Below are positions 11,069-63,972 of a stretch of 64,000 nucleotides of DNA, piece after piece. The notes under the pieces were generated by a model that saw only the letters and a list, made by a program, of their open reading frames with translations, searched no databases and had not been told where the DNA came from. Source of the DNA: Magallana gigas (taxonomy: Eukaryota). Made by a program: the position numbers and the translations under genes. The stretch spans positions 2,418,001 through 2,482,000 of the forward strand of contig NC_088855.1 in assembly GCF_963853765.1 (NCBI RefSeq), written 5' to 3'. The first letter of the stretch is position 1; the number at the start of each line of letters is the position of its first letter.

Positions 11069-14000
11069 ATGATAAACACTTAACAAAATGAAATACAGTT
11101 ATTGAATGGTAGTGGCATTAAATAGATACAAAGCATTAAGTTTACGCAACAATTTTTAACATTATTCCAGTCCGAATTTCCTCCATCAGTTTTCAAATTC
11201 CTACCCTTTTTGATCCAGTTTTACAAAAATTGAAAGATGATAATACCAAAACATTTAAAGCATTTAAAACTGCTTGGTCCGATTTTTTTGTAATTAAAGT
11301 ATCAAATTTTTTTTCATACAAATCATTTATCCTAGAAAGTTATGGACTTTCTCCTATTTACACCAGCAGAATCAGTTTCCTTTCAAAGTTAGAAATATTC
11401 AAAGTAAAAAAAATAATTTCTCTTTGGGCAAACGAAAAAACAAACCAAAATGCATCACGGGAATGTTTAGAAAATGAAACCGCTTGGTTTCGTCCCCCGA
11501 ATGATTGGGGTTATTCAACCCGCATGCTATGCATCCATTGTAAAGAAAGCAGACTTTGGAAATATATGCGAACAAAAGGTACACATGTTTATTTGTAATT
11601 TGTCTGATCATTTCGACCTTTATTTAAAGCGATGTCAAATTCGTAATACAACCATACCTGTCTCGGCGTCAGGGGTTATATTTAACATGAGGCGAAATAA
11701 CGCGGTACCTTTTAACGTCGTTTGTTTTGTTAGCAAATTTTGTACGTATTTTTCTTCATTGAAATTTGGCATAATTGACGGGTATAACTACTGCAATGTC
11801 TATTATTATACATATACTAAGCATAGCCATCGTTTAAAAGCGTGCATAAAATTTGATATAAAATCGGACCAAGCAGCTTTAACTACTTATATTGCCTTAT
11901 TCTGTTGGCATAAAATTTATATGAATTCAGTGATCAAATGTTTGAGATCTTGTGTCTCTCTAACAACAATAAATATAATGGTTCTCTTTAAGGGATATAT
12001 AATTTTCCTAAGATACTCTGCCTGAGTATTTTGATTAATTCGATTGTAAAAAGATTTTTTCCTCTACTTTTCCTGAGTTTTAATGATTTGCTTCTATTAA
12101 AATGATTTATCAGAGACTTTACCAGGTATTCTAAAGACTGAGTATACTATCACCGCAGACTTTCCGGTACTGGGTTCCTATTAATATTGGGAACCACGTG
12201 CCTCAATCTTATGCAGATTTACTACGGCCTGATTCCCAAATCAATTCCCCAGATACCAATACTGCTGGTGAAACTATTTCTAATTCCCACGCTAGCCTCC
12301 ACTTTCCTGACTATTGCCTTCCTAATATTTTTCTTCTTCTGCTCAGGCTTCTCCAATGTGTCGCCTTCGAGCTTCTCAACCAGACTGCCTCAGCTGCAGG
12401 CTGCGCTCACTTATATACCCTTGGAACAGTTCATTTTAAGGGGCATCAGGTCATACCATTTTTATGGGTACGTTCAATTCGTTTTGTAACGTGCTCGAGA
12501 TAGAATCGGATAGCCCGATTCACCCCTGCAAATGTGTTCGGAATGTTTTCTTTATCGTTACTAAGTATATAATAAATCCAGAGGTGCTCGAATGAAAGTT
12601 CACGAGACTTCACCGGGATTTGTTCAGTTCCTGTGAAATTTCGAGCGAAAGTATAAGTGTTCGGATAATATTCTCAAAATACGTAAGTACTGGTCGATTT
12701 TCATATCATATCCTACTTTGATTTATGTTAAAACATGAACATCTTTTAAGATGTATGTCTTATTTCACCATCTAGCGGTTTTTTTTATATTAAACGATGA
12801 TAATCAGAACAGAGTTATCGTTCGTGTTCAACCACGTGTAGAGGGATTGATAATATAAACATTTGGTTGCTTAATAAAATCATAGCCATGTTTGATGCTT
12901 GTGGTGTGCAATACTATGTTTTTAAAAAAAATAATGGGTGAATGTTTTGCATTAAAACTTAGTATATCGAGCCATTTTCAAAGAACATTCTGCATAAAAT
13001 AGTACAGTCTGTTTCACTATTGATGTTATTACTAGGTCAGGCGCGGATCGAAAATTAATTCATGATGGGGATGTCTACTACGCATGTTAATTGTCGCAAC
13101 AGCAGAAAAAAAGCTATTTTTTGTATCGTCACATTTATTTCTAGGACACATTTTATCCACCAATTAAGGAAGATAAAGTTTAAAATCAATAAACCTCTAG
13201 AATTTGTATTTGACGACAAGTACCTAGATTATCTAAAATAGACTATAAACACGAGGCACGATTTTTACTGCGAAACTGAAAGGGTAAAATAAAACCACGT
13301 GATTTAAAATTTAAATGACAATAACATTCGCAGGGGTGTGATTGCTGCCAATATTTACAAGTGCAGACTTTAATCACCGCTCCTGCACATATAGGGACTC
13401 GACTAACGTTACGCAACCAGGAATGACCACACACCCACAAACTCAACAGGTACCAACGATAAAGCTGACATGAATTCATAAAAGCGTTTGGTCGCCATAT
13501 TGGTTTTGATCGCTCCTCTACTGCCACTGGGGTATATATACCGGTCGAGAAAGTTACGGTCGGTTGCTTTCCGATCGAGGCATTCAAGTTACACGGACTT
13601 CTAAATGCATGAACAACATATTGTAGTAAAATCTTTGTAGTAAAGAATAAAAGAAACAATAATCAATAAAATACAAAATATATTTATTCTTTGAAAGAAT
13701 TTCCAAGGTATCCGTACTATTTTGCACAAAAAGTGCTGCCTTTCTTCACATGCACATCGAACACGTGTGTCGTTCATACAAAGTGCATAACGTCTGCATC
13801 TTTTTGAAAACGCCGGCGGCATTCCATTCAACACATTAGATGAATGATAGTAAATCTAAGAAAGTAACAACGTTAACATCGTTACCATCGGTTTCTACAA
13901 AAAAAAATCCATGCGATCATTGACAATGCTCGATCTGCCACAGTGTGTGATTGCGCATGTGCAATGTTATAACATACACAGGAAAACGGTCTACTACAAT

Positions 14001-14304
14001 TATCGAGGATTTTTGAAGTATCTGTGTCTGGATTTTAATTTGTCTTGTTTCGTCGTTCATTGGATATTCCTTGCCAGTGCAGTGGTTGTTTTTAATTTTT
14101 GTTCAAAACGCGTTTCTACACGTCTTTTCGTCCAAGGTAACGTGTTCGGAGGAATGAAATACCTGAATGCGGTGAAGCATGAATACTGTTTTCGGACTTA
14201 TATAGGGGGTGTGTAGCGATGAGCAGAACAATCGAAATCGACCATTAATATGGCGGTAGTCGGAGATAAAAGGGAAATAATTGGTATTATTGAATTCATG
14301 TCAG

Positions 14305-14475
14305 CTTTAACGCAAGCAGGGATGACTGCACACGTGCGCCAACAATGCAACCTAACGCAAGCAGGGAGTGCCGCCCACTTGCGCTATGAAGGCCAGAACA
14401 CCAACAGGGATGATCTCACATTAGCGCTCCGCGGCAACCACCTCCAATACAAGCAGGGATGACCGCCCACTTGTC
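14305..14475 (+). repeat. Degenerate 46-48-bp tandem repeat, 4 units
   Basis: caagcaggga(tgac/gtgc)cgcccactt-like motif at about 14309, 14355, 14401 and 14449. Confidence 0.6.
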
Positions 14476-15330
14476 ATACTGCGACACAGAGGGGGAACGA
14501 CCGCACTTTCTTTATCGAAGGTTAACCTGTTCAAGTCTAACCCCAATCAGTCGTGCAACGGGTTGCGTTTGGCAATGTTGCTATATATGTGCCGGCCAAA
14601 AATAATTTGAAGTATCTTAAAACAGGAAATCAAAAATAACAGACTAATCCGAATTTATCTAAAACTATTTATGCATAACACCTTATTTACATATACTATT
14701 TATTATTGTATAAAAATAATTTGCAAACTCATTGGTCATTATTGGGAACATTGATTAAATTGTCAAAAATCAATAAATAAAAGGGGAATAACTTTAACCA
14801 AAAATACAGTAATAAGCTGCCCGCTTCAGTTTCACTTTTATCGTTTTTAAGCATTTTTCAATATGTTTGCAATTCGTGGCAAACGATTAATTTAATGAAT
14901 AAGTGAGCTAAAACCAACAGAAAATATGCAAAGTTATTTAGACTTAGATATAAAATCTTAACGTTTAATGTTAGAGTTCTGCTAAAAATGCTTTAGCGGA
15001 AAAGAAAATCTGCAAAATTTAGTCCAAATTTCCTCTGTTTGGCAAAATTTCTATTTTTGTTTGAGCTTAATTATATTATAAAGTAAAATACCGAATGTTA
15101 TGTCAAGAATGATTCATTTCATAAATACTTTTTGTGTTTCGAACAAATATTTTTCATGACATATGTGACTTTTTAACAATCCGAATATGAGAACTCAAAC
15201 CCTGAGTAAACAACACCCTTAAACAAATTTAAAACTTCTGTATACATAATGCACAATATGCACCAAATCTCGTCATCTGTAAAACAATGTCATTGCTTAT
15301 AGTGTTTTATATATTAGATATTATAATTTA

Positions 15331-21117: not shown

Positions 21118-22920
21118 TCAGTAAACCGCCGACTGCTTTATTTGGTATGGTTTAAAATGATTTTCAACTGACTTGTCTTGTTTTTTATTCTGAGTTTGGA
21201 ACGACTGGCGTTTTAGCCTTACTTTATTTTTGTCGTTGAAATCACTGAATGTGGAGGCTATGATTGCAATAGGCATAGCAATGATCAAAACACCGGACAG
21301 GGCGCACACCGTACCCACGATCCTCCCAAGCAACGTCTTGGGATACTCGTCGCCATAACCAACGGTCGTCATGGTGATGACCGACCACCAGATTCCCGTG
21401 AACACACTGGGGAAAGTGGTCGGTTCTTTGTACTCCGCGTAGTAAACGAACCCCGCGAAAAAAGTGGAGAAAAACATGAAGGCCATCATCAACAATCCAA
21501 TCTCCCACTTACTGTTCCCCATCGCCAAGAAGAGCATGTTCAGACCATTGTGTTGCCGGATAAGACGGAGCAAGCGGAAAGGACGGAACACAGAGCACAG
21601 CTTGAATGTTATGTACACGGTTCCTGCAATCTTTCCGGCACTCCATATCTCGACGAATTCCATCACGGTGGTGGTCCACATGGAAAAGACAAGGAAGGCG
21701 TCCAGGACATTGAGAGGGGACCGGAAGAATTGCTTTTTGACAGGACATGTTGCAAAATGAAGAATCAGATCTGTCGTGAAGAAAGCAAGACATGTCACCT
21801 GGAGGTGATACAACGAGGGCTTAACAACTGTGGTCACGAAGACGATCTCTTTGGGGTTATCCATATTGACATCGTCGAAAAGGTCGGTGAAGTTCATCAA
21901 TCCCAGAATTTCGTCCTTGGTTTGGACCTGTTCCCTGAAGAGGGGGTGGGTCTCCATGCAGAACAGCGCTACAGACAGGACGGTCACCAGCATAAAGAAG
22001 ATGCTGTAGATCTGGAATGGAGCATGCGCGTTATTGTTCCATAAATTTATGTAATACAAATAATGTTGACCTTCTTTTAAGAATTCTAACCATTTTATAT
22101 AAAATAGGTACCATGTGGTACATTAGAAAATTAATAGACAAGGCTGAAACGACGCTGTGCTGACTATTCTATTCTTAATGTAGCCCATTTATTTTATCTT
22201 ACTACAAAATATACTTCTCGTGACATCACGTGCATTTACAATAATGAAAATGTAAAACATATCACTTTTATACAAAAGAAGAAGTCATTTTAATTCAAAA
22301 TTTGCAATTCGTATATGAATATTTGTAATCTTAGTCTATTTAAAAGTAAATATATACAATATTAAATGAATAAATTAAAATTAAATAAATCAATGCTACT
22401 AGTATATGTACCACGTCCTTCCAAATTGTGTGCTATTTCTCTAAACGTTAACCAAGTATATACTTACAAAGGCTGGCTTGGAGGAGTTCGGACGATCAAA
22501 GAAAAGCCAGGTCTGCCTGAGGAGCTGTTTTGCTTTGTTTTCACTCACTTCCTTAGAGTTGTAGTCAATTTCCACGTCGTCTAGACGCCGTTTCAGCTCC
22601 ATGTGCTTTTTGACGCTCTCTTCGTACTCAGTGATGATCTTCAGACAGCATTCAGCAATGTGGCTCTGGTGGATGTCCCAGTACTCCAACTCTTTGAGGG
22701 TCGCGGCAGCACACACGTTTTGTGGGAGGTGTAGTTCGCCGAGTCTGTAAAAGTCCAGGATGTTGGAGAAGATGGTGTGGTTCCTGTCTATAATGACGGG
22801 ATCCTCGCCGTACGTTTCCTGTGCCATCTTCCCTAGCCGGGTTGACGGGTAAGTCAGTAAGTTTTGACGCTTCGTCTTAAAGGTCATTCCACCAACGTCA
22901 AAGGTCATGAACTCCATCAT
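21118..22920 (-). CDS. Voltage-gated potassium channel subunit, divergent Shaw/Kv3-like (T1 domain plus six transmembrane segments)
   Basis: Exon 22920-22468 (T1: FDVGGMTFKT, YPSTRLG, DRNHTIFSNILDFYRLGELHLPQNVC, ELEYW) joins phase 0 to exon 22011-21118 (S1-S6, pore WWSVITMTTVGYGDEYPKT). An upstream in-frame extension cannot be excluded. Confidence 0.9.
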
Positions 22921-25674: not shown

Positions 25675-28600
25675 ATGAACTATATCCGTACTGGCATCGG
25701 TCTGTTTTTTGAGTATGACACCCCAAGAATCGTTCACATACAGAGCAAAAAGGTCGGGGTGATCAATCGCTTCATTCAGTTCTGTATCATTGGATATGTC
25801 ATCGGGTTTGTATCATGAAATGTCCTATATTTTTGTTCCATCAGAACACTGATTTTAATGATATACATATGATATACATGTTTGGACATAATAACATTCT
25901 AATTAACAGTGAATAATACAGTTACTAAAACCAAAAGAATTTGCCAATGTATGATTGGACATTTTTGGAATATACTTGTATTTACTTTATTCATGTGAGA
26001 TGTTAGACTCCATTAAATTTTATTCTCTATTTAAAATGTGATCTTAATGAAAATTTCATCTCTCATATTTATGCGTGGTGTTAAACCATATCATGTTTAT
26101 ATAGGGCATAATTTTTTTTAAATGGTACCACTGAATTTAGGTACCTCCATGCATGATTAGCAAACAGAAGACTCTTTTTTATTCAGCACTTTCATATAAC
26201 TTTAGGAAAGCTTCTGTACATAAAAACAGGGTTCTTTTTTAGTATTTTACTTATGTTTCTTAATAAATAAGCTTAATTAGAGAGGGATTCAAAGAGGGAT
26301 ATTTTAATGTGAAAAGCTTGATTGCATGCTTATATTTGGATGGGTATAATGAACATATAGTGATCATTGCAAAGAAAGCTAACATTGATATTTTTTTGTT
26401 TTGCAACATGAATTAATGTGATATAGATTCTAAAATTTTAAATTACAATGTTTTAATAGAGTTTGCTTTGTTTTATAATTTTATATTTTAGAGAAATACC
26501 TTTATTTTTTGCAAATGTTTACATTAATCTGTTTTGCTCTCCCTCCATTGAAAACATAATTTGGTTCTCAACAGCTTTGCCATCATTTTCAAAAAAGGCT
26601 ACCAAGACTTTGACAATGTGCAAAGTGTTGTTACTACGAAAGTTAAAGGCATCGTCATGGTGAACACCACAGTCCACCCTGATATCCAGCCCATCTGGGA
26701 CGTAGCTGACTATATTGTACCACCCCAGGTAATTTATTGTATTATATAATATTGGAAAAGAACTATATATGATATTAGTCAAATTTGACCCCCATAATTT
26801 GCCATTTTTTTAAAGTGTTTCTGGTACATTAATTGTTATGTTATATTTTAATTAGAAGAGTTGATATAAATTATATTTTCACCTATTAATTTATTTATAT
26901 GCACCCACTGGCAGAATTTGATGTCAAAAGTAGGCTATTTTTAGAATTCAATCAAAATCAGTCATTATTTGACATTTTTCATTGTCAATTTTTGAATGGG
27001 AAATATAGAGTGGCGCTTTGAACAAGAACAAACTTTTTGTCACATATAAGTACTGAATAGATACATCTTTGGTGAAAATATTTTGTTTGTTCAAGCAATC
27101 GCTCAATGTTTTATTAAAGAAAAACTGCTTGAAAACCAGCTGTTTTATGCTGTAAATGCGAAAATGGAGGGAAAAGGTCAACTTTATGATGTCATATTTT
27201 TAAATTGGGGACATTAAAATCAAAATTAAAATTATGAAAAAACTACAAATGTGTATTTGTACAAATAAAACAAAGAATTACAGTATAATGATGATGTTCA
27301 TTTAAGGGGGCCATATTAAACTCAAACCATATATAGTCCTTTAACATTAATTTTTTCATTAGATTACAGTAAATCACTAGCAGAAAAATGCCAACTGTTA
27401 TTTGAAAATAAACATTACTTCAGTTTATTTAATAATTAATATATAAACACTAACTACATTGCCTTCTATTGGTGAATATTTCCTTTCTGGGCTAGCAAAA
27501 CCCTTTTTAAGAATTCATTCATTTAATGATATTGTTTAGTTATTGAAAGCCGGATTATATATATGATGCATTTAAAATACGAAAATACAAATTTTAATCT
27601 AGATAGATTTCATTTGTATTTCTCTTTTTTTGCAGGAGAACAATGCTTTTTTTGTTATAACCAATCTCATAGTCACCCCAAACCAATCAATCGGAATCTG
27701 TCCAGAGGTAGGCCTTATTTCAGTTGTAGCGATTTCATACTGATTAATCACATCTCATCAATATCACTCATCAAAATTAATATGATCATCAGCATACTTG
27801 ATCTGTTTTGTAAACATGTAAAACTTGATCCAACTATTTGTGTTTTATATCCTATTAAAAAACAGAGAACATAGAAAAATACTATTAAAAAAAATTCATG
27901 TGTTTTGCCAAATGACAATGCATTAAACCATGACAATTAATTTTAATGAAGCACTCAGCAGGTGTGTATCAGTACAGTGTGTATTTTATAACACTCTTTA
28001 TACTGATAACACTTTAAAACTTTCAGTATACATGTGCTCAGTAAATTCACTTGAAGTTTTTGATAACCATCAATTGTTATATATGTTCAAGCAATGAAGA
28101 ATCAAACACTGCTTTTTCTATAGGACAGCACTGTATATGGTTCTAATTGTACTGTGGACAAAGACTGTCCGGCAGGTACCTCACTTCCTGTTGGCAATGG
28201 TGAGCCACCACTTCAGTTAGTTATACATCATAAATCTAACGCTGACAGAACTTAGTTCTTCTCTGAAAAACAATCTACAGAATTTATCAGTAAATAACTG
28301 ATTTGAACATTTTGTACTATGTGAGATCATAAACACCTGAAAAGATGTGGCTTTGCTTTGGTACAAAATCCAAAGTATTGGGTGACTCCTTAAGAAATAT
28401 AAATTCAGAGCAGACAGAACTGTGAATATCTGAAACCTACATTTTAGATTTTTTTCAGCTGCAGGTCTGTACCTCCCAGTCTGAAAAAATATAGATGGAT
28501 GACCTTGGAGCTACAGTGCCACCCATTGAAAAATTATGTATTTATTGCACCCAAAAATGTGTGCTATTTTTGGACTGATTAACCTTATTGATACACAAAT

Positions 28601-31600
28601 TCTGTGAAAACAAATAGTACCATTCAATTCTTCATGCAGTTTACTACTATTCTCGTCTTGTTACTTGCTTCAGATAGTCTTTTGAACACCATCACTAGCC
28701 CTGTAAAATGAAGTTGTGATGTTTGTTAACATGTTAAAATAACAACTCTAGATCTCAATGTAAATTTAACATACTTGATTTTCTGAGGTCAGTAGTGTGT
28801 TCATAAAGAATTTAATGTTACTAATTGTTTTCACAGAATTTGCTGATAAATAAGGTTGATCAGTTTTTTTCAATGGGTGGCACTGTAGCTCTCAGGTCAT
28901 CTGTCTAGATTTTTTCATACCAGAAGCTACAGACCTACAGCTAGATCTTTTTATGAAACTTTTTTTATTGCATCGATATATGCTGCTATATCAATAACAT
29001 GTATTTGAAGAATGAAGAGGATGTTTGATATACATCTCTTTTTCGTTTTACAACAGGTGTTTTAACAGGAAAGTGTGACCCTGATGTCAATAGATGTGAA
29101 ATCCATGCATGGTGTCCCGTGGAAAATGGGACCACCAAAGCGTATGGACTTTTCTCATTTTTACATATCACACTTGAATGTCTTTTGTTTTATTTTTTAT
29201 TAAGGCTGGGATGTACATACTATCATGATATGCAACTATAGCAAGCACATATTTTTGTAGGTCAATTTTAACGTCCAATATTTATTTTGTAATAATTGAA
29301 TAATACGATACAAAATTCTTTATCTCAATATAACTACAACAAGCACGTTACATAATAACCAAGGTAATTTTTCTACTTATCTAAATAAATGATTAAACAT
29401 TTGTCCAAAAACGATCCCTACTAGAAAGAGGTAATGTAAATAAATTAATCAAAAACAGTATATTTTACATGGGATTAAAAAGTGTTCTAAAATATTGCCA
29501 TGTCTCATTGGATATTTTTAAAAGTAAGTACAGTCATGTACAGCAAATGTAAAAGAGCCGATCCTGTTAGCATTTGCATCTTTGAGAAAGTGAACTTTAT
29601 CTACTAAGTGCAATCATTGTTATAAACACCACAAAAATCAGTAGATGTGATGATGGATATCATCTGCAAAAAAAGTACATGTGTACTAAATTAAAAAAAA
29701 TTAATAAAATCTAGACCTTTTACCTATTACGAATAAAAAGCAAGTATTTGCTCTCAACAACAAAAATTACAGTATCACAAATTCCTTGTGTTAAAAAAAT
29801 TAAAAAATTACTTATAAATTCAATATATTTTTTTTTATTTCAGACCCAAACCAGCTATTTTAGAGGAATCAAAAAAATTTACTGTATTTATAAAAAATAA
29901 TGTAGAGTTTCCAAAGTATAACGTTAAAAGGTAAGTTTGATATGGACATGCATATAACTTGCTTGTTTTGTATATATGTTATCAGTTTCTGGTTTGTATA
30001 AAAAGATATTATTTTGTTTGGCATCTGAATTAGTTTATGAGTACTAAAAATTCATATAAACATGCATGAGCTACAATTTTTTATGATTTATTGAGACTCA
30101 TTCCTGAAAATGACCTCTAGTGATGCTTTGCCATATTGAATCATATATTAATTTGTGAGACTTTCAAAAACATCCTCATAAACTTTAATGTAGCATGATG
30201 AATATTGCCTATATTCTTACTGATATTATTTTTCTTGCAAACAGAAGTAATTCTATGTTAGCAATATAGTCTTAGAGAATTGTTGAAAATACTAACAATT
30301 ACATTTTAGTTGCCCCCATCTTGAAGGTGGACAAATGACATTTTTTTTTACAAGTTTGTGTATAAATTAATGACGTGTATGGTAATTAAATAATAAATTT
30401 AAACAGGCGAAACTTGCCGGACAATGTGAGTAACGACTATCTCCAGAACTGTAGGTATGACGGCGGGGCCAACTCAAGGTGTCCTATCTTCACTCTCCAG
30501 TCCATTGTAGAGGGGGCAAATAGTGGATCCTATGGAGAAGTAGCGATGGAGGTACGGTTTGACCTAGTGTAATAGATAAGGGATATGTAAAAGTAAAGAC
30601 AGAGGTATGGTTAGACCTAGTGTAATTGATAGGGGATTATTCTGAGAAGTAGCAACAGAGGTACAGATAGACCTAGTGTAATAGTAAGGGGATTGTAGGG
30701 AGGAGTAGAGACAGAGGTACGGTTAGACCTAGTGTAATAGGTAGGGGATTGTAGGGAGGAGTAGAGACAGAGGTACGGTTAGACCTTGTGTAATAGGTAG
30801 GGGATTGTAGGGAGGAATAGAGACAGAGGTTAGGTTAGGAATAGAGACAGAGGTATGGTTAGACCTAGTGTAATAGGTAGGGGATTGTAGGGAGGAATAG
30901 AGACAGAGGTTAGGTTAGGAATAGAGACAGAGGTATGGTTAGACCTAGTGTAATAGGTAGGGGATTGTGCATAGATCTAGCAACACTACAGCTAGTAGCA
31001 GGTTAGACCTAGTGTATTGAATATATGAACCCAAAGGGAATTAGTTAGAGGTATGATTAGACCTATTTTGATAAATAGTGGGTAATATAGAGAATAAGTG
31101 TTAGAAGTATAAAAGCAGTGTAGGTAATTTTTAATGGGACATAGAGAGAATTAGTATGAGATACATGTATAAGAACTAATATAAAAATTTATAGTGGGAT
31201 CATCACAGAGTTAGTAGTGGAGGATCAATTGATCTAATGTAATATGCATTGAAATCTTCAGAGAAAGATTGAGATAAGATATAGATCATACAGCTTGCAC
31301 AGATAAAAAGTATTAGAGGAATTATAAGACCAAAGGGTAACATGTGTGTATATGTATATAATTATATGAACTATCATAGTTTGTGATGGTACATGATTTT
31401 TATTCAACAGGTTATGTGATTTTTATTCCCCAATCTAAACTAACCTACTTTTTTGTATTCAATCAGTGTAGTGAACACAAGATCTATCATTTTATATACA
31501 TCATTCTGTATACATCAGCAGCTTTACCAACTAAAAAAAATATAAGAATGTGACTGATCTTATTCCGATATGCTTTAATGCATGTTAAATGTTTGTGTTT

Positions 31601-34437
31601 TTGATTAATTTAGATAAGTTCTAAAATCATGCATGTTATTTTCTGTTTGGCCTTTTCATCCATTTTCTTGCAAATGCACATTTAATATTTTCACTGCTTG
31701 AAATGCAGATTTTTTTCTTTATAATGTGATTTTTGTTTTTATTCCTTTGAATTGTAAACACAACAATAATTCAAATTTTTTGTACATCAAACATCAAATT
31801 GTTTATAATCTCTGCCATTGTCAAGGAGACTGGTAACAAATCATGATAATAAGTTTATTTATTCTTAAATCATAAAATTTTTCTGTATAATCCTGACTCA
31901 AAATGGCACGACAAGTTTTAATGATCCTCTTCCTTTTTTTAATCCTTATCAAAGGAAACTAATTGTGCATTTGCAGGAGAAATATCTTTTATTTGAAATC
32001 GAACGAAGACTTGTCAAACTGTCGATTTAATCCTGATGGCCCTGCTGACAAGTATTGTCCCATTTTTGTGTTGAAGGACATTGTTAGTGGCACAGGAAGT
32101 AGATATGATGAGTTGTCCGTCCAGGTACATTGATAAGTTTTACCTGTCATATAATGATGTAAATTACAATTGCATTGGTTTGCTGATAAATTTTACCTTT
32201 GAAAGGTCCTCCAGGAAAATCAAGGCATTAATTTTCAAAAGTATTGGTTTTCAGTCTGCTCATTATTGTAATACCGATGGATAGACTCCTAACTGTGTAT
32301 ACTATTTTTGGTTTGCTATAGGGAGGAGTTATTCAGATCCGGATCAAATGGAACTGTAATCTGGATCTGTCGGTAGATAAATGCCTTCCGGAGTACAGTT
32401 TCAAAAGACTGGACAGCAGCACTTACAAGATATCAAAAGGATACAACTTTCGGTACATACTGTGGATTATTATAATTTATTCACAGTCTCATAGGTTTTG
32501 TGAATCTTCAACAAATTTTGAACTATTATTTTTTAAATGAATCCATCAAATTACATTCTGATAAACTTATAAAAACAAAAACTGGCAATGTTTTGCCAAT
32601 TGGCCCTCAGAAATGTTAAAAAAAATTTACATAATGCTTTTACATCAAGAACTTTGAAAGAAAAACTTTGATAAGATACTTGTAATGATTATGTATGGAC
32701 ATACACAGGTTCTATTTCTTTCACAATTGTCTTCTTTTCTACATGCATTTCAGATATTCAAGAAATTTCAAAGATGCCAATGGGACAGAGTTCCGAACCC
32801 TGTATAAAGCCTATGGGATCAAGTTTGTAATCTCTGTGTCAGGACAAGCTCGGAAATTTGCCCCTGTTCCATTCTTAACCAACGTGGGAAGTGGCCTGGC
32901 TCTGTTGTCCATTGTAAGTCTCATAAAAGCTACCTCTGTTTGGGTGCAGTATACTACACACCTGTACCTTTGTGAATATTATTAAGTGGCCTTGCAGGAT
33001 CAAAAGTCAAATTTCTAACATTTATATGATTACTGTCTTCATATACCATAATAAATGTACTCTGAGAGCTTATCTGTTTTTATCTGTTTGTAATCTGGTT
33101 GTTTTTTTTAAGACAGACAGGTATGCATGTACCATATCACATAAAATCCACGGCAAAAATTATTAAGTTCTTGGATAAATCAAATGGATTTTTATTTCAT
33201 GAGAAATTCACCAGAAATGAATTTAGCAATTAACAAATAATGTACTTCAATTTTTTCTGGAAACTAGTTTGTATGCTCTTTCATTATGAAATTCGTATGT
33301 GACATTATTTTGTGACATTGTGACATTGTTTGTGACATTGTTTGTGATATTATTTGTGATATTGGGACATTATTTAGGACATATGTGACATTATTTGTGA
33401 TATTGTGTCATTATTTTGAACATACGTGACATTATTTGGGACAATTGTGACATAAATTGTGATATTGTGACATTGTTTGGGGCATTTGTGACATTATTTG
33501 TGACATTGTGACATTATTTAGGACATATGTGACATTATTTGTGATATTTTGATGTTATTTGTGACATTATTTGAGACATTTGTGACACTATTTGTGATAT
33601 TGTGTCATTATTTTGAAAGTACGTGACATTATTTGGGACACTTGTGACATAAATTGTGATATTGTGACATTGTTTGGGGCATTTGTGACATTATTTGTGA
33701 CATTGTGACATTATTTAGCACATATGTGACATTATTTGTTATATTTTTGTTATTTGTGACATTATTTGAGACATATGTGACATTATTTGTGATAGTGTGA
33801 CATTGGTGACATTATTTGTGACACCGTTACATTATTTGTGCCATTGTGACATTATTATGGACATATTACATTATTTGTGATACTTTGATATTATTTTGAA
33901 CATATGTGTCATTATTTGGGACAATTGTGACATAAATTGTGATATTGTGACATTGTTTTGGACATTTGTGACATTATTTGTGACATTGTTACATGATTTA
34001 GGACATTAATTACATTATTTGTGACATTATTTGTGACATTGGGACATTATTTGGGAATTATTTTGGACATTTGTTACATTATTTGTGATATATGTGACAT
34101 AATTTGTAACATAATTACATGATTGTGGGCATTTGGCACATTATTTGGGACATTATTTGTGACATTGTGACTTTATTTGTGATATTGTGACATTTTGGTA
34201 TTTGTTAATGGTCCACCAGTCTCTTATACTATGCACAGTTTTCAATTTGACAATTGAAGAAAGTGTAGCATATAAGAAATGTTGACAACCAAACATCCAC
34301 TGAAAACATTGATCTGAATTTACTCTTTGCTACAGGCAACAGTCATCTGTGACATTGTGGTCCTATACATGCTGAAGGCCAGGGCACTGTACAAAGAGAA
34401 GAAGTACCTGCAGGTGGTGGGCGATGATGCTTACAAG
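25675..34437 (+). CDS. P2X purinoceptor (P2X4-like); terminal coding exon not resolved
   Basis: Exons 25675-25805, 26575-26728, 27636-27707, 28124-28199, 29057-29141, 29844-29930, [30407-30551 or 31977-32124], 32322-32452, 32754-32913, 34336-34437. Motifs [76 protein letters not shown]. Confidence 0.95.
30407..30551 (+). CDS. P2X alternative exon 7a (dorsal fin region)
   Basis: cag acceptor, gtacgg donor; [48 protein letters not shown]; phase 2 in, phase 0 out. Confidence 0.9.
30520..31070 (+). repeat. About 58-60-bp minisatellite containing repeated copies of the exon 7a donor junction
   Basis: Units like aggggattgtagggaggagtagagacagag|gtacggttagacctagtgtaatag resemble the real junction agtggatcctatggagaagtagcgatggag|gtacggtttgacctagtgtaatag. 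Confidence 0.9.
31977..32124 (+). CDS. P2X alternative exon 7b (dorsal fin region)
   Basis: ttgcag acceptor, gtacat donor; [49 protein letters not shown]; phase 2 in, phase 0 out. Confidence 0.9.
33295..34200. repeat. Intronic tgtgacattatt-based satellite with higher-order repeats
   Basis: 9-13-bp tgtgacat(tatt) subunits; the block gggaca(a/c)ttgtgacataaattgtgatattgtgacattgttt recurs at about 33437, 33635 and 33918. Confidence 0.9.
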
Positions 34438-38460: not shown

Positions 38461-41131
38461 TAATGTTTCTTAGGAAAAGGTTGGACCACGTACTCGTAGA
38501 CCCATACTTGATTCTAACCTAGGCGGCAAAGATTTTTTAAAAAATTAGCAATATTTCATACTCAAGAAGTAATTTAAATAAATTTTTAACAGGGTATGGT
38601 AAACGAAGATTTGATACACAGACAGAACTATCAAACTATCTCTGATAATGAAAATGATTTATGATCTCTCTGGATATTCAAAGGTTTGTGTCTGACTGTA
38701 TCCCCATCCTTAAACAAATCCTTCCTTATTTAATTATTGAGAGGCATTGCATCCAATCCAACAAAACCTCACGTCTATTAAAAATATAAATAAATCACAT
38801 TTATTTAAATATTTATTATTGTTTTTGATGCTTTAAGCTTTTTTACTTCAAATGATGTAATATCACCTGTAATATCACCTGTTTTTTGTTCTCATCCTAT
38901 TATACTAATGATTATCCCAAAAATTAGGATGAATGGGTTTAAGGGAAGCCTCACAAATTGTTGCTTGAATAATTTAAAAGTTTTATTATTTAAACGTACA
39001 TGTATGAAGAATAACATGAAAGAAATATCGTACTGTGTGGGTTTTTTTGGCTATTAAAATACGCAGACGTTTGCTGATGGATGATATACGTATTTTTAAT
39101 TTTTAAGAAAAAAAAAACGACATCTTATGATTTAAGTTTTCTCAAGATTCTCAAATCTTCATTGTCATTAAGATTTTTCTATTTGTCTGCAAATTTTATC
39201 AGTTTCTTTTTAGAGGTTTGGAATCTTTTTATTATGGAGGAGATGTGTTTACTTGATGAATGCGATTTCGTAATAACAAATTTATGCATTCGTACGCGTG
39301 TAATGGATCCAAACCACTTTTTCCTAAATCGGGGGGGGGGGTCTTCTTGCTAAATGCAAATATATTAATATAATTATTAAACCGTATCAAATTCCTTTTT
39401 ATATAGAAGAATCTATTTTTAAGCGGGTTTTCCAAAGGAAGAATCTGGTTATTAAAATAGTGAAAATGGCGGGCGGCTGCCAAAGAGTACCCATATATGT
39501 ACGGCTAAATCTTTCTACAGTTTTCAAGATAAGAAGTTGTTGTTTTGCAAAATAATTGTTCATATATCGAAGATGTGCATACTTGGATTTTGATTTTTGA
39601 TAATGTATAAAATATATACCAGCCATTGAACTTCATATTCTCACAAAACACTAACGTATACAATATCCCTGGGTATCTCTGGATAGGTACAGGTAGTGTT
39701 TATCAATTCAGGGTTGACAAATGAATTATGGATAGTGTTCACACATAAGAGAACTCGTTTTGACTGCTTTTCTCTTTTTGTATTGTTTTGTAAAATACGA
39801 AAACTAGACTTTAGATGCAATCATATTAACGTGTAACCTATACAAAATTACAATACGGCTTGCATAATCAGGCTTGTTATCATGTGTACATATATCATTC
39901 CGAAGAACATAGCACAGATTATAAATGCTTCTGTATTTCCTGTAAATTGAAGCTTTACCCGCTTACTTCTGTTGGCATCAGAAGCAAATTTAAAATATAC
40001 CTCGTTTTAGTCTTTTGGATTTCTAATAAGTTTGAATATGTCTTAAGTTTGCACAACGTAATAGCCTCACAACTTTCGTACTAAGACGTATAGAACAAAG
40101 GATTAATGAATAAATTAATGTTAATAGCTGCAAGCAGTCATTTGTTATAAAAAGTTTATCATTTTCATATAGTACAATGTAGTTGTTTTTGTCGCATCAA
40201 GAGAACTTTCAGTGCTAATGTCTCATAAGTACATGAAATGCATGTGCATAGCATATCCGTTGATGAGGGGTTATTTCATCTAAGTCATCAGCACATTAGA
40301 TCCATATGCACCATTCCTAAAAATGATTTTGAATCTGCTGCATATACGTACAGATTCTCTCAATATTTGTTAAAGCTCACCTGGGCGAGAAGCCTTCGGA
40401 GCTTTGCTGATCAAGTTTTGTTCACTCAGTTTATTTTTATATTCATGCAACAGTTATAAAATGCTTGAATTTTTTGTAGGTGCTAGACTGAAAAATCCAT
40501 TCCTGACTATTCTGACGAGTGTGTAAGTGTTCATATTGTTTCAGTACAAGATATTCCCGAACTATTTAAACAATGCATGAGGCTTGGTAAAACGCAATAC
40601 TAATGTATCCCCTTTTATTTTGTAGTTGCTATGGGGAGATATGCAGCAGACAGACTATGTCCATTTTGATCATTAGGGTCCCTAGAAATGTATATTTGGT
40701 GGGAAATGTTTATCTGTTTACAAAATGACACACTTTTCCTTGTTTCACCTTATGTATTTTTGTATATTTACTTTTGTACGTTTTTCTTTAATTTGTTAAT
40801 TTGGTTAATTAGTTTATAAGGTACGAGGTAAGGTGGGTCTGTTTAGTTTTTTCATTATTGTAAAGATTTGAAGTAAGGTAAATGAATTAGAAGATGGACA
40901 AAAAATTAGTGACCTGAACTTCAAGTTAGAGAATGACACTTCATGTGTGACAATTTGTATTTCATTCAGATATTCTCTGTATCAGTTTGAATAAAGAATG
41001 GGTATGCAGATTACTCATCAGTGTTTGTAGTTTATTACATAACTATCATACGGGTTATATGTTCAGAAAATTCTAGACACAACTCAGTGTTGTTTTACCG
41101 ATACTTAGACACATTATAAAGTCCTCTTCCA

Positions 41132-59256: not shown

Positions 59257-59402
59257 NNNNNNNNNNNNNNNNNNNNNNNNNNNNNNNNNNNNNNNNNNNN
59301 NNNNNNNNNNNNNNNNNNNNNNNNNNNNNNNNNNNNNNNNNNNNNNNNNNNNNNNNNNNNNNNNNNNNNNNNNNNNNNNNNNNNNNNNNNNNNNNNNNNN
59401 NN
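59257..59402. other. Assembly gap (146 N)
   Basis: Run of n. Confidence 1.
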
Positions 59403-61720: not shown

Positions 61721-63972
61721 CTACTGCCTTTCCCACTGTAAGGTTGGAATGTCACTGTTACAATTTCCATGATAAACTTTAATTTGTTCAGAACATGTGT
61801 AATACTGATCAAACACCTGGCCGTATCCATGATCCCGCCACCAAACACACAGCTGACGGTTCCAGGAACATGGCAAGATGTGGAACAGATCCTCGTGTTC
61901 CATGGAAACAAGAGTGTAAAAATCCTGATCTCCCAGGTGACCCTTGAACAGATATTTTTGAGTCAATGTCTCCAGTGTCTTAGGTGAATCTATCAGAGAA
62001 TTATACACTTGACTCTTTCTCATTTTCTCCAAGTCTAGGAGTAAAACTCCGCTATTGAATCCTGTCAAGCCATCAGGAGGCGGAGCGCCGACTCTAGTGG
62101 AAGGGTTTTTTCCACGATATTGATGAAATAAATGTCTGTAAACTGGCTGGTTCTCTCGAGCTATTCCAATGATAGATCTTTCTGAAAATTCATCAAAAAT
62201 ATTGTACAGCAGCCTAATGTCTTCATCAAATTTCAAGTCAACATCCAGCATTATCACTTTGTCAAGAGGAATAAATCTGTGTAATACTATGGACAGGAAA
62301 AACAGTGGGTCTCCATAGTAAGATTTTGAACTGTGGCTGAAGAAGGTCTGCATCTGAGAAATCTGTTCCTTTACCTTTTGTGTCATTATTGTAATGTCGT
62401 GAATGATAATCTGAAGAAAAAAAAACAACCACTTTTCAGCATGTGTATGTGTGTATAAGTCACTTTTATCAACCAACTCTCAGGCTCTGTTATCATTATG
62501 ATTTGATATTCAACATTGGTTTATTGATCTTTCATGGTTCTGCTGTAAATTTCTCAATTACATTGTATTACAAAATTGGCATTTTTCATAGTTTTTATAG
62601 AAAAATTGTACTATTTAAATGTAAACATTCCATTAAAAATACATTAAATATCCACTACTATACTACCTTGTAGCTAATTATAAGCTTATTTGAATCATTG
62701 AAATGCCCATTTCATGGTTAAACAAAATCTATAAGCCTATAGATAAGAGATCAGGAGTGATCTAAAAATTGATACGTTTCATTCAGATTAATCTGAGTTT
62801 ACATTGTCCAAGCATATAAACCTCTTGTCCCATTCGTTGAAAAGCACTTCCATCCACATTTAGAAATACATGTAAATTGTGTGTATGCCTAATACAGACA
62901 AGATTTTTATTGGGACATTTTATGACAAATTTACTTATAAAAATTTTTTTTCAAAGCTGTTCAAAACTAAATAGATGACAATGGAAAGGAATTTTGATTT
63001 TAAAAAAATTGTACATATTAAAAACATCTTGTGTCAAGTATCTTTTTTCAGTTTGTTGGGAGAAGATAATAATACAATATCTTATCCAACTGGTAACTTT
63101 TCATTGAAACTGTGATGGTCAGATTAGATTGTAAAGCTCACTAGGTAGAACACCTAACTAGAGATTCAGGAGGCCTGGGTTCGAATCCCAGTCTGATTTG
63201 TCAATATTTTTCCCATCCGGTTACGTTTGCAGTATACTTGCCAACCCCTGGAACTGACAGCATGGTTAAATCCTGTCAGGGAAAAAAACCAGACCAGACT
63301 GAATACTGACGCCAGATAGCTTAATAGATAGAGCACTTGATTAGAGATTAAAGGGACCAAGGTTCAAATCCCGGTCTTTATCATTACCCCCCCCCCCCTT
63401 CCTGTACATTATTAGAAGTGGATACACATGTACATGTAGTTTGAATTCAGGCATTGAACATGTTGTAAGAAAAAAGAACCAGGAGCAGTGTTCTAAATAG
63501 GACAGATTTTTCAATGAATTAGATTACAAATCTTGAATAATATCACCTGTGTTTCTGTTGGTGCGGCTCTTTCTATAACAGAAGTTGCTATTGTCTTTCC
63601 ATCCTCATCACAAATCACATGAAAACAGAGAGATATGGAAGATTTCCTGCTAATGGATTCTACGAGAACTTTAAATTTTGGATGTAAATTTGGGTTGTTC
63701 TTTGAATTTTTAATCACGATCACAATGTTGACATTTCCTTCCTTTCTCTTTAAGACAGTTGTCTCCCTTGACGCAATGTGAATGAAAGTGTCTTTCGTTT
63801 TGTTCTTTAAATGCTTGACAGTTCCTCTTCTAACGAGAAATTTTTCTTTTTTAATGTTTTTAGTCAAATTAAAAACTTTTGAGCTCCATAAAATGATCAA
63901 AATAACAAAAACAATACATAACAGGGAATATAGCTTCCTTGGAAAAGTGCGGAACAGTTTGTAGGATGCCAT
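61721..63972 (-). CDS. XXYLT1: Xyloside xylosyltransferase 1 (GT8 family, type II membrane protein)
   Basis: Exon 63972-63547 (N-terminal transmembrane anchor) plus exon 62410-61721, phase 0; motifs YYGDPLFFLS, MLDVDLKF (DxD), ARENQPVYRH, GFNSGVLLLDL, GHLGDQDFYTL, LPCSWNRQLC, YHGNCN. Confidence 0.92.
63135..63377 (+). mobile_element. Degenerate tRNA-derived repeat, two tandem tRNA-like heads, in the XXYLT1 intron
   Basis: A-box-like agctca..ggtagaacac / agctta.tagatagagcac and B-box-like gggttcgaatccc / aggttcaaatccc, about 180 bp apart. Confidence 0.6.

What the first reader, a model, noticed from the sequence alone, without database searches (positions are those of the whole stretch)
30407..32124. 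P2X receptor has two frame-locked, mutually exclusive dorsal-fin exons
Seen in sequence: two homologous but strongly diverged exons (7a, 145 nt; 7b, 148 nt), each with a canonical acceptor and donor, each entering in phase 2 and leaving in phase 0, each keeping RN..., the Cys pair and CPIF. Joining 7a to 7b shifts the frame to a TAA inside 7b, and skipping both also frameshifts, so exactly one must be used. Only 7a has an N-glycosylation sequon (NVS). Established: this segment forms the P2X dorsal fin and part of the lower body, and it contributes to the ATP pocket and gating. Inference: one gene makes two pharmacologically different subunits that could also co-assemble in trimers. I recall two splice forms being reported for the Aplysia P2X receptor but have not verified that they involve this exon.
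Basis: partly seen in the sequence, partly recalled or inferred. Interest (0 to 1): 0.85.

Follow-up and report, generated by a model that had tools for sequence, protein, structure and literature searches.

The report
Oyster P2X gene's alternative dorsal-fin exons
The only ATP-gated P2X channel gene found in this oyster carries two alternative copies of one exon, exactly one of which is spliced into each productive mRNA; this switch is shared by four classes of molluscs and was only partly noticed before.

Summary
Exon 7a (30407-30551, 145 nt) and exon 7b (31977-32124, 148 nt) are homologous (47% amino-acid identity). Both have AG/GT splice sites and the same phases. Using both exons, or neither, gives an early stop.

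Transcript contigs from four public runs contain the joints 6->7a, 7a->8, 6->7b and 7b->8. None contains 7a->7b or 6->8. Two runs hold both forms at similar depth, one assembled only 7b, and one spliced only 7a.

The pair is old. The same a-then-b tandem exons occur in the genomes of other oysters, a pearl oyster, a scallop, a chiton and an octopus. Automated RefSeq models list a/b isoform pairs in more than a dozen mollusc genera. The two cloned Aplysia splice forms differ in exactly this exon.

It is therefore a new member of a partly known kind. New points:
- the b exons share one origin;
- 7b is missing in Crassostrea virginica and frameshifted in one C. gigas-like contig;
- 7b is under weaker but real purifying selection;
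- an intronic sequence conserved in oysters can pair with the 7b acceptor and may regulate it.

Functional differences between the two isoforms remain untested.

The parts
25675..25805 (+). P2X exon 1 (coding part, starts at the ATG)
   Evidence: ORF reconstruction; Pfam PF00864 positions 1-36
26575..26728 (+). P2X exon 2 (carries the TTKVKG ATP-binding lysines)
27636..27707 (+). P2X exon 3
28124..28199 (+). P2X exon 4
   Evidence: the letters that transcript contigs carry before exon 5 are the end of exon 4
29057..29141 (+). P2X exon 5
   Evidence: joint 29141->29844 in transcript contigs
29844..29930 (+). P2X exon 6, the common upstream exon; it ends with 2 bases of a codon
30407..30551 (+). 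Exon 7a (145 nt), the ancestral-like 'a-type' dorsal-fin exon with the NVS sequon
   Evidence: joints 6->7a and 7a->8 in runs X27, X7 and X25; matches P2X4 residues 203-247; groups with the a-type and outgroup exons in the tree
30534..30968 (+). Minisatellite (56/80-nt units) that repeats the last bases of exon 7a plus its donor site
   Evidence: Tandem Repeats Finder; 'goes back' joints in X7 suggest the copy number varies
31662..31685 (+). Conserved intronic arm complementary to the exon 7b acceptor
   Evidence: inverted repeat I1; duplex -28 kcal/mol against -16.1 +/- 2.0 for shuffles; the same arm occurs in C. angulata, O. edulis and Saccostrea
31959..31982 (+). Exon 7b acceptor region (last ~18 intron bases, the AG and the first 6 exon bases), which pairs with the arm
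   Evidence: a 20-base block TGTGCATTTGCAG|GAGAAAT is identical in three oyster genera
31977..32124 (+). Exon 7b (148 nt), the derived 'b-type' dorsal-fin exon without a sequon
   Evidence: joints 6->7b (X25; loose end in X27) and 7b->8 (X27, X35, X25); groups with the mollusc b-type exons
32322..32452 (+). P2X exon 8, the common downstream exon
32754..32913 (+). P2X exon 9 (NFR...YGIKF motifs and the start of TM2)
   Evidence: joint 32452->32754
34336..34437 (+). P2X exon 10 (rest of TM2 and the YxxxK region)
   Evidence: the letters that contigs carry after exon 9 match this exon
40480..40491 (+). Last coding exon (VLD, then the stop codon)
   Evidence: pattern search; it matches the C-terminus ...DDAYKVLD of P0248

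Best explanation
This is the only P2X (ATP-gated cation channel) gene detected in the genome of an oyster from the Crassostrea/Magallana group. An ancient tandem duplication of its seventh coding exon left two alternative cassettes, 7a and 7b.

Shown:
- Each cassette is spliced on its own between exons 6 and 8.
- Both have lengths of 1 modulo 3, so an mRNA with both or with neither runs into an early stop.
- Different samples favour different cassettes.
- The a-then-b pair is present in bivalves, a chiton and an octopus at the genome level, and in gastropods at the level of protein models.
- The b-type exons share one origin.

Inferred:
- mRNAs carrying both or neither cassette are removed by nonsense-mediated decay.
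- The cassette encodes the dorsal fin and adjacent lower body. That includes the Leu and Ile that touch ATP, which both cassettes keep, and the surface that touches the neighbouring subunit's left flipper, where the cassettes differ most. The two subunits therefore probably differ in gating, desensitisation or modulation rather than in the ability to bind ATP.
- In oysters, a conserved intronic sequence 0.3-3.5 kb upstream can pair with the 7b acceptor (about 18-24 bp). This probably hides that splice site unless a factor opens the stem, giving a switch between 7a and 7b.
For: Sequence and frame logic.

Transcript junctions:
- 6->7a in X27, X7 and X25.
- 7a->8 in X27, X7 and X25.
- 6->7b in X25, plus a 17-letter exon-6 loose end in front of 7b in X27.
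- 7b->8 in X27, X35 and X25.
- X25 has two parallel contigs of 202 nt (depth 17) and 205 nt (depth 14.5). They are what two alternative paths between exons 6 and 8 would give.
- X35 has one contig running 7b-8-9 (depth 76) and nothing on 7a.
- X7 splices 7a only.

Only one P2X gene: every Pfam PF00864 match in the 564-Mb assembly lies in this gene.

Conservation:
- a/b isoform pairs exist in Ostrea, Mytilus, Pecten, Argopecten, Mizuhopecten, Mya, Dreissena, Haliotis, Littorina, Pomacea, Gigantopelta, Elysia, Patella, Aplysia and the chiton Liolophura.
- The genomic order is a then b, with intact AG/GT sites, in C. angulata, O. edulis, the chiton and Octopus; their lengths are also 1 modulo 3.
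- The same order was seen by tblastn in Saccostrea, Pinctada and Pecten.
- The nemertean Lineus has a single exon.
- In the tree, all 27 true b-type exons sit on one side of a branch with 98/96 support. The a-type and non-mollusc exons sit on the other side.

Selection between oyster genera: dN/dS is 0.25-0.34 for 7b, 0.03-0.10 for 7a and 0.01-0.07 for exons 6 and 8.

The b-type is functional elsewhere: the cloned, ATP-gated Lymnaea receptor carries a b-type exon (PMC3510196).

Structure: the exon aligns to human P2X4 203-249. The roles of L217, I232 and the dorsal fin-left flipper contacts come from PMC4460280.

Stem:
- The inverted repeat was found.
- Duplex energies are -28 (window), -27 (C. 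angulata), -33 (O. edulis) and -35 (Saccostrea) kcal/mol. Each lies about 6-7 SD below dinucleotide shuffles, and no shuffle out of 60-200 reached it.
- The arm is an island of conservation in otherwise unalignable intron.
- The 7b acceptor is by far the arm's best partner in three genera, and the other splice sites sit at background level.
Against: - No functional data exist for the oyster isoforms.
- Contigs show presence, not absence or quantity, so 'only 7b' in X35 and 'no double or skipped form' are weak statements.
- Three of the four runs are only guessed to be RNA, although their contigs are spliced.
- 7b is dispensable in at least one oyster: C. virginica has no 7b in its 758-nt intron between 7a and exon 8.
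- One C. gigas-like contig has a 4-nt deletion in 7b.
- 7b evolves 3-5 times faster than 7a in oysters.
- In Aplysia, the b form gave small, unstable currents (PMC7943599).
- For the stem, the acceptor side never varies, so there is no two-sided covariation in the core. There are only one-sided G-C to G-U changes and some flank changes.
- Pinctada, Pecten, the chiton and Octopus show no such stem. It therefore cannot be what makes the exons mutually exclusive across molluscs.
Confidence: 0.85

Rival explanations
1. Exon 7b is a decaying duplicate in oysters. Its inclusion would be splicing noise, or a way to make a poorly functional protein, and only the 7a isoform matters.
For: - 7b is absent from C. 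virginica.
- A C. gigas-like contig has a 4-nt deletion and extra changes in the 7b acceptor.
- RefSeq has no clean b isoform for C. gigas, C. angulata or C. virginica.
- dN/dS of 7b is 3-5 times that of 7a.
- window_b sits on a long terminal branch (0.49, against 0 for window_a).
- Aplysia AcP2Xb gave small, unstable currents (PMC7943599).
Against: - 7b is intact, with good splice sites, in the window, C. angulata, O. edulis and Saccostrea.
- dN/dS of 0.25-0.34 at saturated dS is not neutral.
- 7b-containing mRNA is as abundant as 7a mRNA in two runs, and is the only assembled form in a third.
- The b-type exon has kept its ORF and frame in four mollusc classes.
- The functional Lymnaea receptor is b-type (PMC3510196).
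- The conserved arm and acceptor imply selection on how 7b is regulated.
Confidence: 0.08
2. Both isoforms are real, but their channels are equivalent. The pair would be kept only because the two exons are tied to different expression programmes (regulatory subfunctionalisation).
For: - Both cassettes keep the ATP-contacting Leu and Ile, the Cys pair and CPIF.
- Aplysia AcP2Xb currents were described as 'very similar' in kind (PMC7943599).
- Isoform choice depends on the sample.
Against: - Each type has kept its own signature across four mollusc classes: a-type RNLP..xxYL, b-type RNI(L/I)GFxNDx(E/Q)L...CPIF(V/I)LxDI. That is selection on the protein sequence of each cassette, not just on its presence.
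- The differences fall on the residues that contact the left flipper, a contact tied to gating (PMC4460280).
Confidence: 0.2
3. The arm-acceptor complementarity is a leftover of an inverted duplication or a transposon's terminal repeats, with no role in splicing.
For: - The acceptor side is invariant, so the core shows no two-sided covariation.
- No such stem exists outside the oyster family.
Against: - Synonymous sites between the oyster genera are saturated (dS about 1).
- The surrounding intron does not align, and the spacing varies from 315 to 3483 nt.
- Even so, the arm persists and stays complementary in three genera.
- In C. virginica, which lacks 7b, neither the arm nor the acceptor block was found in the 7a-8 intron.
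- In the contig whose 7b is frameshifted, the acceptor side of the stem carries two substitutions.
Confidence: 0.2

Closest known systems
Aplysia californica AcP2X / AcP2Xb splice forms (NP_001191558.1 / NP_001191559.1; PMC7943599)
   Same: - It is the same exon position in the only P2X gene the Aplysia authors found.
- AcP2X carries an a-type cassette and AcP2Xb a b-type cassette.
- The b cassette groups with the oyster 7b side of the tree.
   Different: - The paper describes the forms as differing by a '147 base deletion/insertion' with 92% identity. It does not describe them as mutually exclusive exons or place the difference in the dorsal fin.
- The first 17 residues of the AcP2X a cassette are unlike those of other sea-slug a cassettes.
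- No acceptor-masking stem was looked for in Aplysia.
Lymnaea stagnalis LymP2X versus transcriptome contig FX193730 (PMC3510196)
   Same: - The authors noted a 150-nt (50-aa) stretch that differs and suggested an alternatively spliced exon.
- LymP2X carries a b-type cassette and is a working ATP-gated channel.
   Different: - It is a one-sentence remark that places the region in the 'cysteine rich head domain'.
- The other isoform was not cloned or tested, and no genomic exon pair was shown.
Automated RefSeq isoform models X1/X2 of 'P2X purinoceptor 4-like' in molluscs (for example Ostrea edulis XP_048748540.1 / XP_056008746.1)
   Same: They contain exactly the a or the b cassette (385 against 384 aa in Ostrea).
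   Different: - They are unpublished pipeline predictions.
- In C. gigas, C. angulata, Saccostrea cucullata, Batillaria, Sinanodonta and Mytilus coruscus, the models wrongly join both cassettes or parts of them.
Mutually exclusive exons in other ion-channel genes that rely on frame incompatibility (from my own knowledge, not checked here: voltage-gated Na+ and Ca2+ channel exon pairs, and reviews of mutually exclusive splicing)
   Same: Tandemly duplicated homologous exons of the same phase, with only the single-inclusion mRNA keeping the reading frame.
   Different: This pair is in a trimeric ATP-gated channel, in the ligand-pocket and subunit-interface module. I found no report of such a pair in vertebrate P2X genes.
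Docking-site/selector RNA pairing in arthropod mutually exclusive exon clusters (Dscam exon 6, 14-3-3 xi; from my own knowledge)
   Same: Conserved long-range intronic base pairing next to an alternative exon.
   Different: - Only one stem was found here. It covers the 3' splice site of one exon rather than competing for a shared docking site.
- No second conserved partner was found.
- It looks more like a splice-site-masking hairpin.

Membership tests
P2X receptor (Pfam PF00864) | Sequence match to the P2X family profile | tested here: met
   Six exon-wise matches reach the curated cut-off (one only when counted with its neighbours in the frame), best E=3e-15, all inside this gene. Full-length relatives have E down to 1e-153.
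P2X receptor (Pfam PF00864) | Conserved ATP-binding residues (zebrafish P2X4 K70, K72, N296, R298, K316, L217, I232) | tested here: met
   The rebuilt protein has TTKVKG, GYNFRY and LYKAYGIKF. The L of YL (7a) or DL (7b) and the I of CPIF are kept in both cassettes. The residue roles come from PMC4460280. I made the correspondence by eye and from my own recalled +3 numbering offset.
Mutually exclusive exon pair from a tandem exon duplication | Adjacent homologous exons with the same phase and a similar length | tested here: met
   47% amino-acid identity; 145 and 148 nt; both enter in phase 2 and leave in phase 0.
Mutually exclusive exon pair from a tandem exon duplication | Each exon is spliced on its own to the same flanking exons in transcripts | tested here: met
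   All four junctions are present in contigs from 3-4 runs belonging to 4 studies.
Mutually exclusive exon pair from a tandem exon duplication | No productive transcripts carry both exons or neither | tested here: inconclusive
   Both combinations give early stops, and no 7a->7b or 6->8 joint was seen. However, contigs drop rare variants and no raw reads were laid.
Mollusc P2X a/b alternative cassette (Aplysia AcP2X/AcP2Xb) | Orthology of 7a with the a-type and of 7b with the b-type cassettes | tested here: met
   Tree of 69 cassettes: window_b lies with Ostrea and Saccostrea b (99/95) inside the b-type side (98/96), and window_a lies with the oyster a cassettes (100/98). The genomic order is the same in 7 other mollusc genomes.
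Docking-site/selector RNA switch (Dscam type) | One docking site that pairs alternatively with a selector beside each variant exon | tested here: not met
   The arm has one strong partner only, the 7b acceptor. The next-best partners are weak and not conserved, and the 7a splice sites score at background level.
Splice-site-masking stem | Conserved base pairing that covers a splice site, stronger than chance | tested here: met
   About 18-24 bp cover the polypyrimidine tract, the AG and the first 6 exon bases. The duplex lies about 6-7 SD below shuffles in four oyster genomes from three genera. An effect on splicing was not tested.

The most novel reading that the evidence does not exclude
Since their common ancestor, molluscs have used one P2X gene with a swappable dorsal-fin cassette in place of a P2X gene family. 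The a and b subunits would differ in gating and could form mixed trimers. In oysters, the choice would be set by a conserved long-range RNA stem that hides the 7b acceptor until a tissue-specific factor opens it.
Probability: 0.3. Interest if true: 0.65.

Novelty: new member of a known kind. Interest (0 to 1): 0.45.

Why it matters
Vertebrates diversify ATP-gated channels with seven P2X genes. Molluscs appear to have one: the Aplysia and Lymnaea papers say so, and only one was detected in this oyster.

A cassette swap in the module that closes over ATP and touches the neighbouring subunit is a compact way to make two kinds of channel from that one gene. It could also give mixed trimers.

The swap offers a natural experiment on how the dorsal fin tunes P2X gating, with two versions refined by selection across four mollusc classes. 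It also explains why the cloned Lymnaea (b-type) and Aplysia (a-type) receptors differ in this stretch.

For genome annotation, several public mollusc P2X models wrongly contain both cassettes. The oyster-specific stem is a testable case of RNA structure controlling exon choice outside arthropods and vertebrates.

Tried and rejected
1. A search for homologues restricted to the b-cassette region of Ostrea X1 found only 6 candidates and one hit. The word index is too coarse for a 60-aa region, so I could not survey b-type exons outside molluscs that way. The only outgroup genome I inspected, the nemertean Lineus, has one exon.
2. The flatworm Macrostomum fell on the b-type side of the tree on a very long branch (1.99). 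I treat this as unreliable.
3. My first rule for sorting a and b cassettes mislabelled Aplysia AcP2X, Mya X2 and Gigantopelta X1 as b. The tree and the alignment show that they are a-type.
4. P0002 looked like an ORF across 7b in a relative, but it reads a TGA as Trp. The DNA shows a 4-nt deletion and a stop instead.
5. I looked for a second partner of the arm and for stems at the 7a acceptor, the 7a donor and the 7b donor. Nothing stood above background.
6. I looked for the stem in Pinctada, Pecten, the chiton and Octopus. It is absent from all four.
7. I could not name the species. The window's a-isoform is 96.6% identical to the C. gigas RefSeq protein and about as close to C. angulata. Intron identity to C. 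angulata is 83-98% in patches.
8. Earlier notes of this scan held nothing near this place.
9. The first attempt at the second sequencing-run search failed because the machine was busy. I repeated it unchanged.

Full report
**What is in the window**

The + strand between 25675 and 40491 carries a P2X receptor gene. I rebuilt its coding exons from splice sites, reading frames and transcript contigs. They are 25675-25805, 26575-26728, 27636-27707, 28124-28199, 29057-29141, 29844-29930, then either 30407-30551 (7a) or 31977-32124 (7b), then 32322-32452, 32754-32913, 34336-34437 and 40480-40491.

With 7a the product has 384 aa. Over the 381 aa rebuilt before the short last exon, it is identical to P0248, a 384-aa protein predicted from public transcript assemblies. 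A Pfam P2X scan of the whole 564-Mb assembly matched only this gene. That is a lower bound, but it agrees with the single-gene picture reported for gastropods (PMC7943599, PMC3510196).

Run labels ('oyster metagenome') and the nearest named proteins point to an oyster of the Crassostrea/Magallana group (C. gigas 96.6% identity, C. angulata about as close, C. virginica 88.7%). I could not name the species.

**Checking the observation**

- Both exons have AG acceptors and GT donors.
- Both start with the last base of an AGG codon and end on a full codon.
- Their lengths are 145 and 148 nt.
- Including both gives a TAA inside 7b, and skipping both gives a stop in exon 8.
- Only 7a has a sequon (NVS).
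- The peptides are 47% identical and share RN, the two Cys and CPIF.
- Each matches residues 203-249 of solved human P2X4 structures.

**Are both exons used?**

I searched public runs for the region and for 7b alone and laid the contigs of four runs from four studies on 28900-33100.
- All four productive joints are present: 6->7a (X27, X7, X25), 7a->8 (X27, X7, X25), 6->7b (X25, plus a 17-letter exon-6 tail in front of 7b in X27) and 7b->8 (X27, X35, X25).
- X25 has two parallel contigs of 202 and 205 nt, at depths 17 and 14.5. They are what two alternative paths between exons 6 and 8 would give.
- X27 is similar, at depths 18.3 and 17.3.
- X35 has a single contig running 7b-8-9 (depth 76) and nothing on 7a.
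- X7 splices 7a only. It covers 7b only in contigs that run on unspliced across the intron between 7b and exon 8.
- No 7a->7b or 6->8 joint appeared.

These are contigs. They prove presence but not absence or level, and three of the four runs are only guessed to be RNA, although their contigs are spliced.

**How old is the pair?**

A profile of 7a and 7b found two classes of this exon in many species. A homologue search with names and cluster listings then showed a/b isoform pairs in many genera:
- bivalves: Ostrea, Mytilus, Pecten, Argopecten, Mizuhopecten, Mya and Dreissena;
- gastropods: Haliotis, Littorina, Pomacea, Gigantopelta, Elysia, Patella and Aplysia;
- the chiton Liolophura.

I fetched genomic loci and found the exons in the order a then b in C. 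angulata, O. edulis, Saccostrea cucullata, Pinctada, Pecten, Liolophura and Octopus bimaculoides. Where I read the DNA itself (C. angulata, O. edulis, the chiton and Octopus), both exons have AG/GT sites and lengths of 1 modulo 3.

The nemertean Lineus has one exon. In a tree of 69 cassettes, all true b-type exons lie on one side of a branch with 98/96 support. The a-type exons lie with the single exons of other phyla. So b is a derived copy that arose once, at or before the base of the living molluscs. The a copy stayed close to the ancestral sequence.

**What was already known**

- The two cloned Aplysia forms are exactly this pair: AcP2X is a-type and AcP2Xb is b-type, and both are 434 aa. 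[quoted passage not shown]
- The Lymnaea paper noted in one sentence a differing 150-nt stretch and suggested an alternative exon. The cloned, functional LymP2X is b-type.
- My literature searches found no description of a conserved, mutually exclusive dorsal-fin exon pair in P2X genes.

**Constraint and loss in oysters**

Between oyster genera, dN/dS is 0.03-0.10 for 7a, 0.25-0.34 for 7b and 0.01-0.07 for exons 6 and 8, with dS near saturation. So 7b is constrained, but less so than 7a.
- C. virginica has no trace of 7b in its 758-nt intron between 7a and exon 8. Its RefSeq isoforms are both a-type.
- One public contig (L007) shares the peptide DELSGQ with the C. gigas RefSeq model. It has a 4-nt deletion in 7b that leads to a stop, plus two changes in the acceptor region.
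- The RefSeq models of C. gigas (7a plus the last 48 nt of 7b) and C. angulata are odd, although the C. angulata 7b is intact in the genome.

The b cassette is therefore ancient but can be lost.

**A conserved stem over the 7b acceptor**

An inverted-repeat scan found that 31663-31684 is complementary to 31960-31981. The second stretch is the end of the intron, the AG and the first bases of 7b.
- The predicted duplex is -28 kcal/mol, against -16.1 +/- 2.0 for dinucleotide shuffles of the intron.
- The same arm occurs in C. angulata (329 nt upstream), O. edulis (921 nt) and Saccostrea (3483 nt). The energies are -27, -33 and -35 kcal/mol. Each lies about 6-7 SD below shuffles, and no shuffle reached it.
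- The arm is an island of conservation in intron that otherwise does not align.
- The 20 bases TGTGCATTTGCAG|GAGAAAT at the acceptor are identical in three genera.
- The arm's best partner is always the 7b acceptor, and the other splice sites score at background level.
- Pinctada, Pecten, the chiton and Octopus lack such a stem. Neither the arm nor the acceptor block was found in the 7a-8 intron of C. virginica.
- The acceptor side never varies, so changes in the core are one-sided (G-C to G-U).

I read this as a probable splice-site mask specific to the oyster family. Its effect on splicing is an inference.

**How it most likely works**

Shown: there are two cassettes, each used alone, and a frame lock makes every other combination unproductive.

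Inferred:
- Unproductive forms are removed by nonsense-mediated decay.
- Both alternative acceptors look weak, which fits regulated exons.
- In oysters, the stem keeps 7b hidden by default.

The cassette spans human P2X4 residues 203-249, which is zebrafish P2X4 206-252 by my own recalled +3 offset. According to PMC4460280:
- L217 contacts the ribose and I232 the adenine of ATP;
- R206, I208, P210, S214 and L217 contact the left flipper of the neighbouring subunit;

Both cassettes keep the Leu, the Ile and the disulfide. They differ most in the first 12 residues (a-type RNLPDNxSDxYL, b-type RNI(L/I)GFxNDx(E/Q)L) and after CPIF. I therefore expect differences in gating, desensitisation or modulation rather than in ATP recognition itself. 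Mixed trimers are possible where both forms are co-expressed. None of this was tested.

**Verdict**

It is the oyster member of an alternative-exon pair already glimpsed in two gastropods and present in automated annotations. I file it as a new member of a known kind.

Five things are new here:
- the conservation of the pair across mollusc classes and its single origin;
- its loss in C. virginica;
- weaker constraint on 7b;
- use that depends on the sample;
- the conserved stem over the 7b acceptor in oysters.

Noticed in passing
window 30534-30968: A minisatellite (56- and 80-nt units, about 5 copies) begins inside the last 18 bases of exon 7a. Each unit repeats the exon end plus a donor-like GAG|GTACGG or GAG|GTATGG. 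'Goes back 301/248' joints in run X7 suggest that the copy number varies. No joint from these decoy donors to exon 8 was seen.
   Followed up: partly
L017 (Pecten maximus) 13027-15073: The intron after exon 8 of the scallop P2X gene holds about 15 tandem copies of the last 15 codons of exon 8 (RLDSGDFSLSRGFNF). It is a second case, in a bivalve P2X gene, of a minisatellite built from the end of an exon.
   Followed up: no
L007 (Logan contig of SRR6063309), aligned to window 31786-32745: This relative or divergent haplotype (93% identical) has a 4-nt deletion in exon 7b and two substitutions in its acceptor region. It shares the peptide DELSGQ with the C. gigas RefSeq isoform X1. 7b may therefore be disabled in some C. 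gigas haplotypes.
   Followed up: partly
proteins P0120, P0121, P0128, P0137, P0243-P0246: Public gene models for Saccostrea cucullata, Batillaria, Sinanodonta, Mytilus coruscus, C. angulata and C. gigas (X1, K1QUL6) join both cassettes, or 7a plus part of 7b, into one protein. These look like annotation artefacts caused by the exon pair.
   Followed up: partly
protein P0231 (Aplysia NP_001191558.1), residues about 215-232: The first 17 residues of the Aplysia a-type cassette (RQTKPSKQRKRHVLKKC) are unlike the a-type cassettes of other sea slugs (RRNLPENEDDAYLSKC). This could be a frame problem in the deposited sequence or a real divergence.
   Followed up: no
proteins P0209 (sea urchin XP_011663299), P0007 and P0046: These models contain two nearly identical copies of the same exon-7 region in tandem. 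They may reflect recent independent duplications or assembly artefacts.
   Followed up: no
window 21118-22059, minus strand: A 313-aa open frame matches Pfam Ion_trans and Ion_trans_2 (E=1.5e-34). It is a six-transmembrane cation-channel exon or gene on the opposite strand, about 3.6 kb upstream of the P2X start codon.
   Followed up: partly
window 61721-62476, minus strand; window 59257-59402: A 251-aa open frame matches glycosyltransferase family 8 (E=1.4e-8). Nearby there is a run of 146 N, which I left untouched.
   Followed up: no
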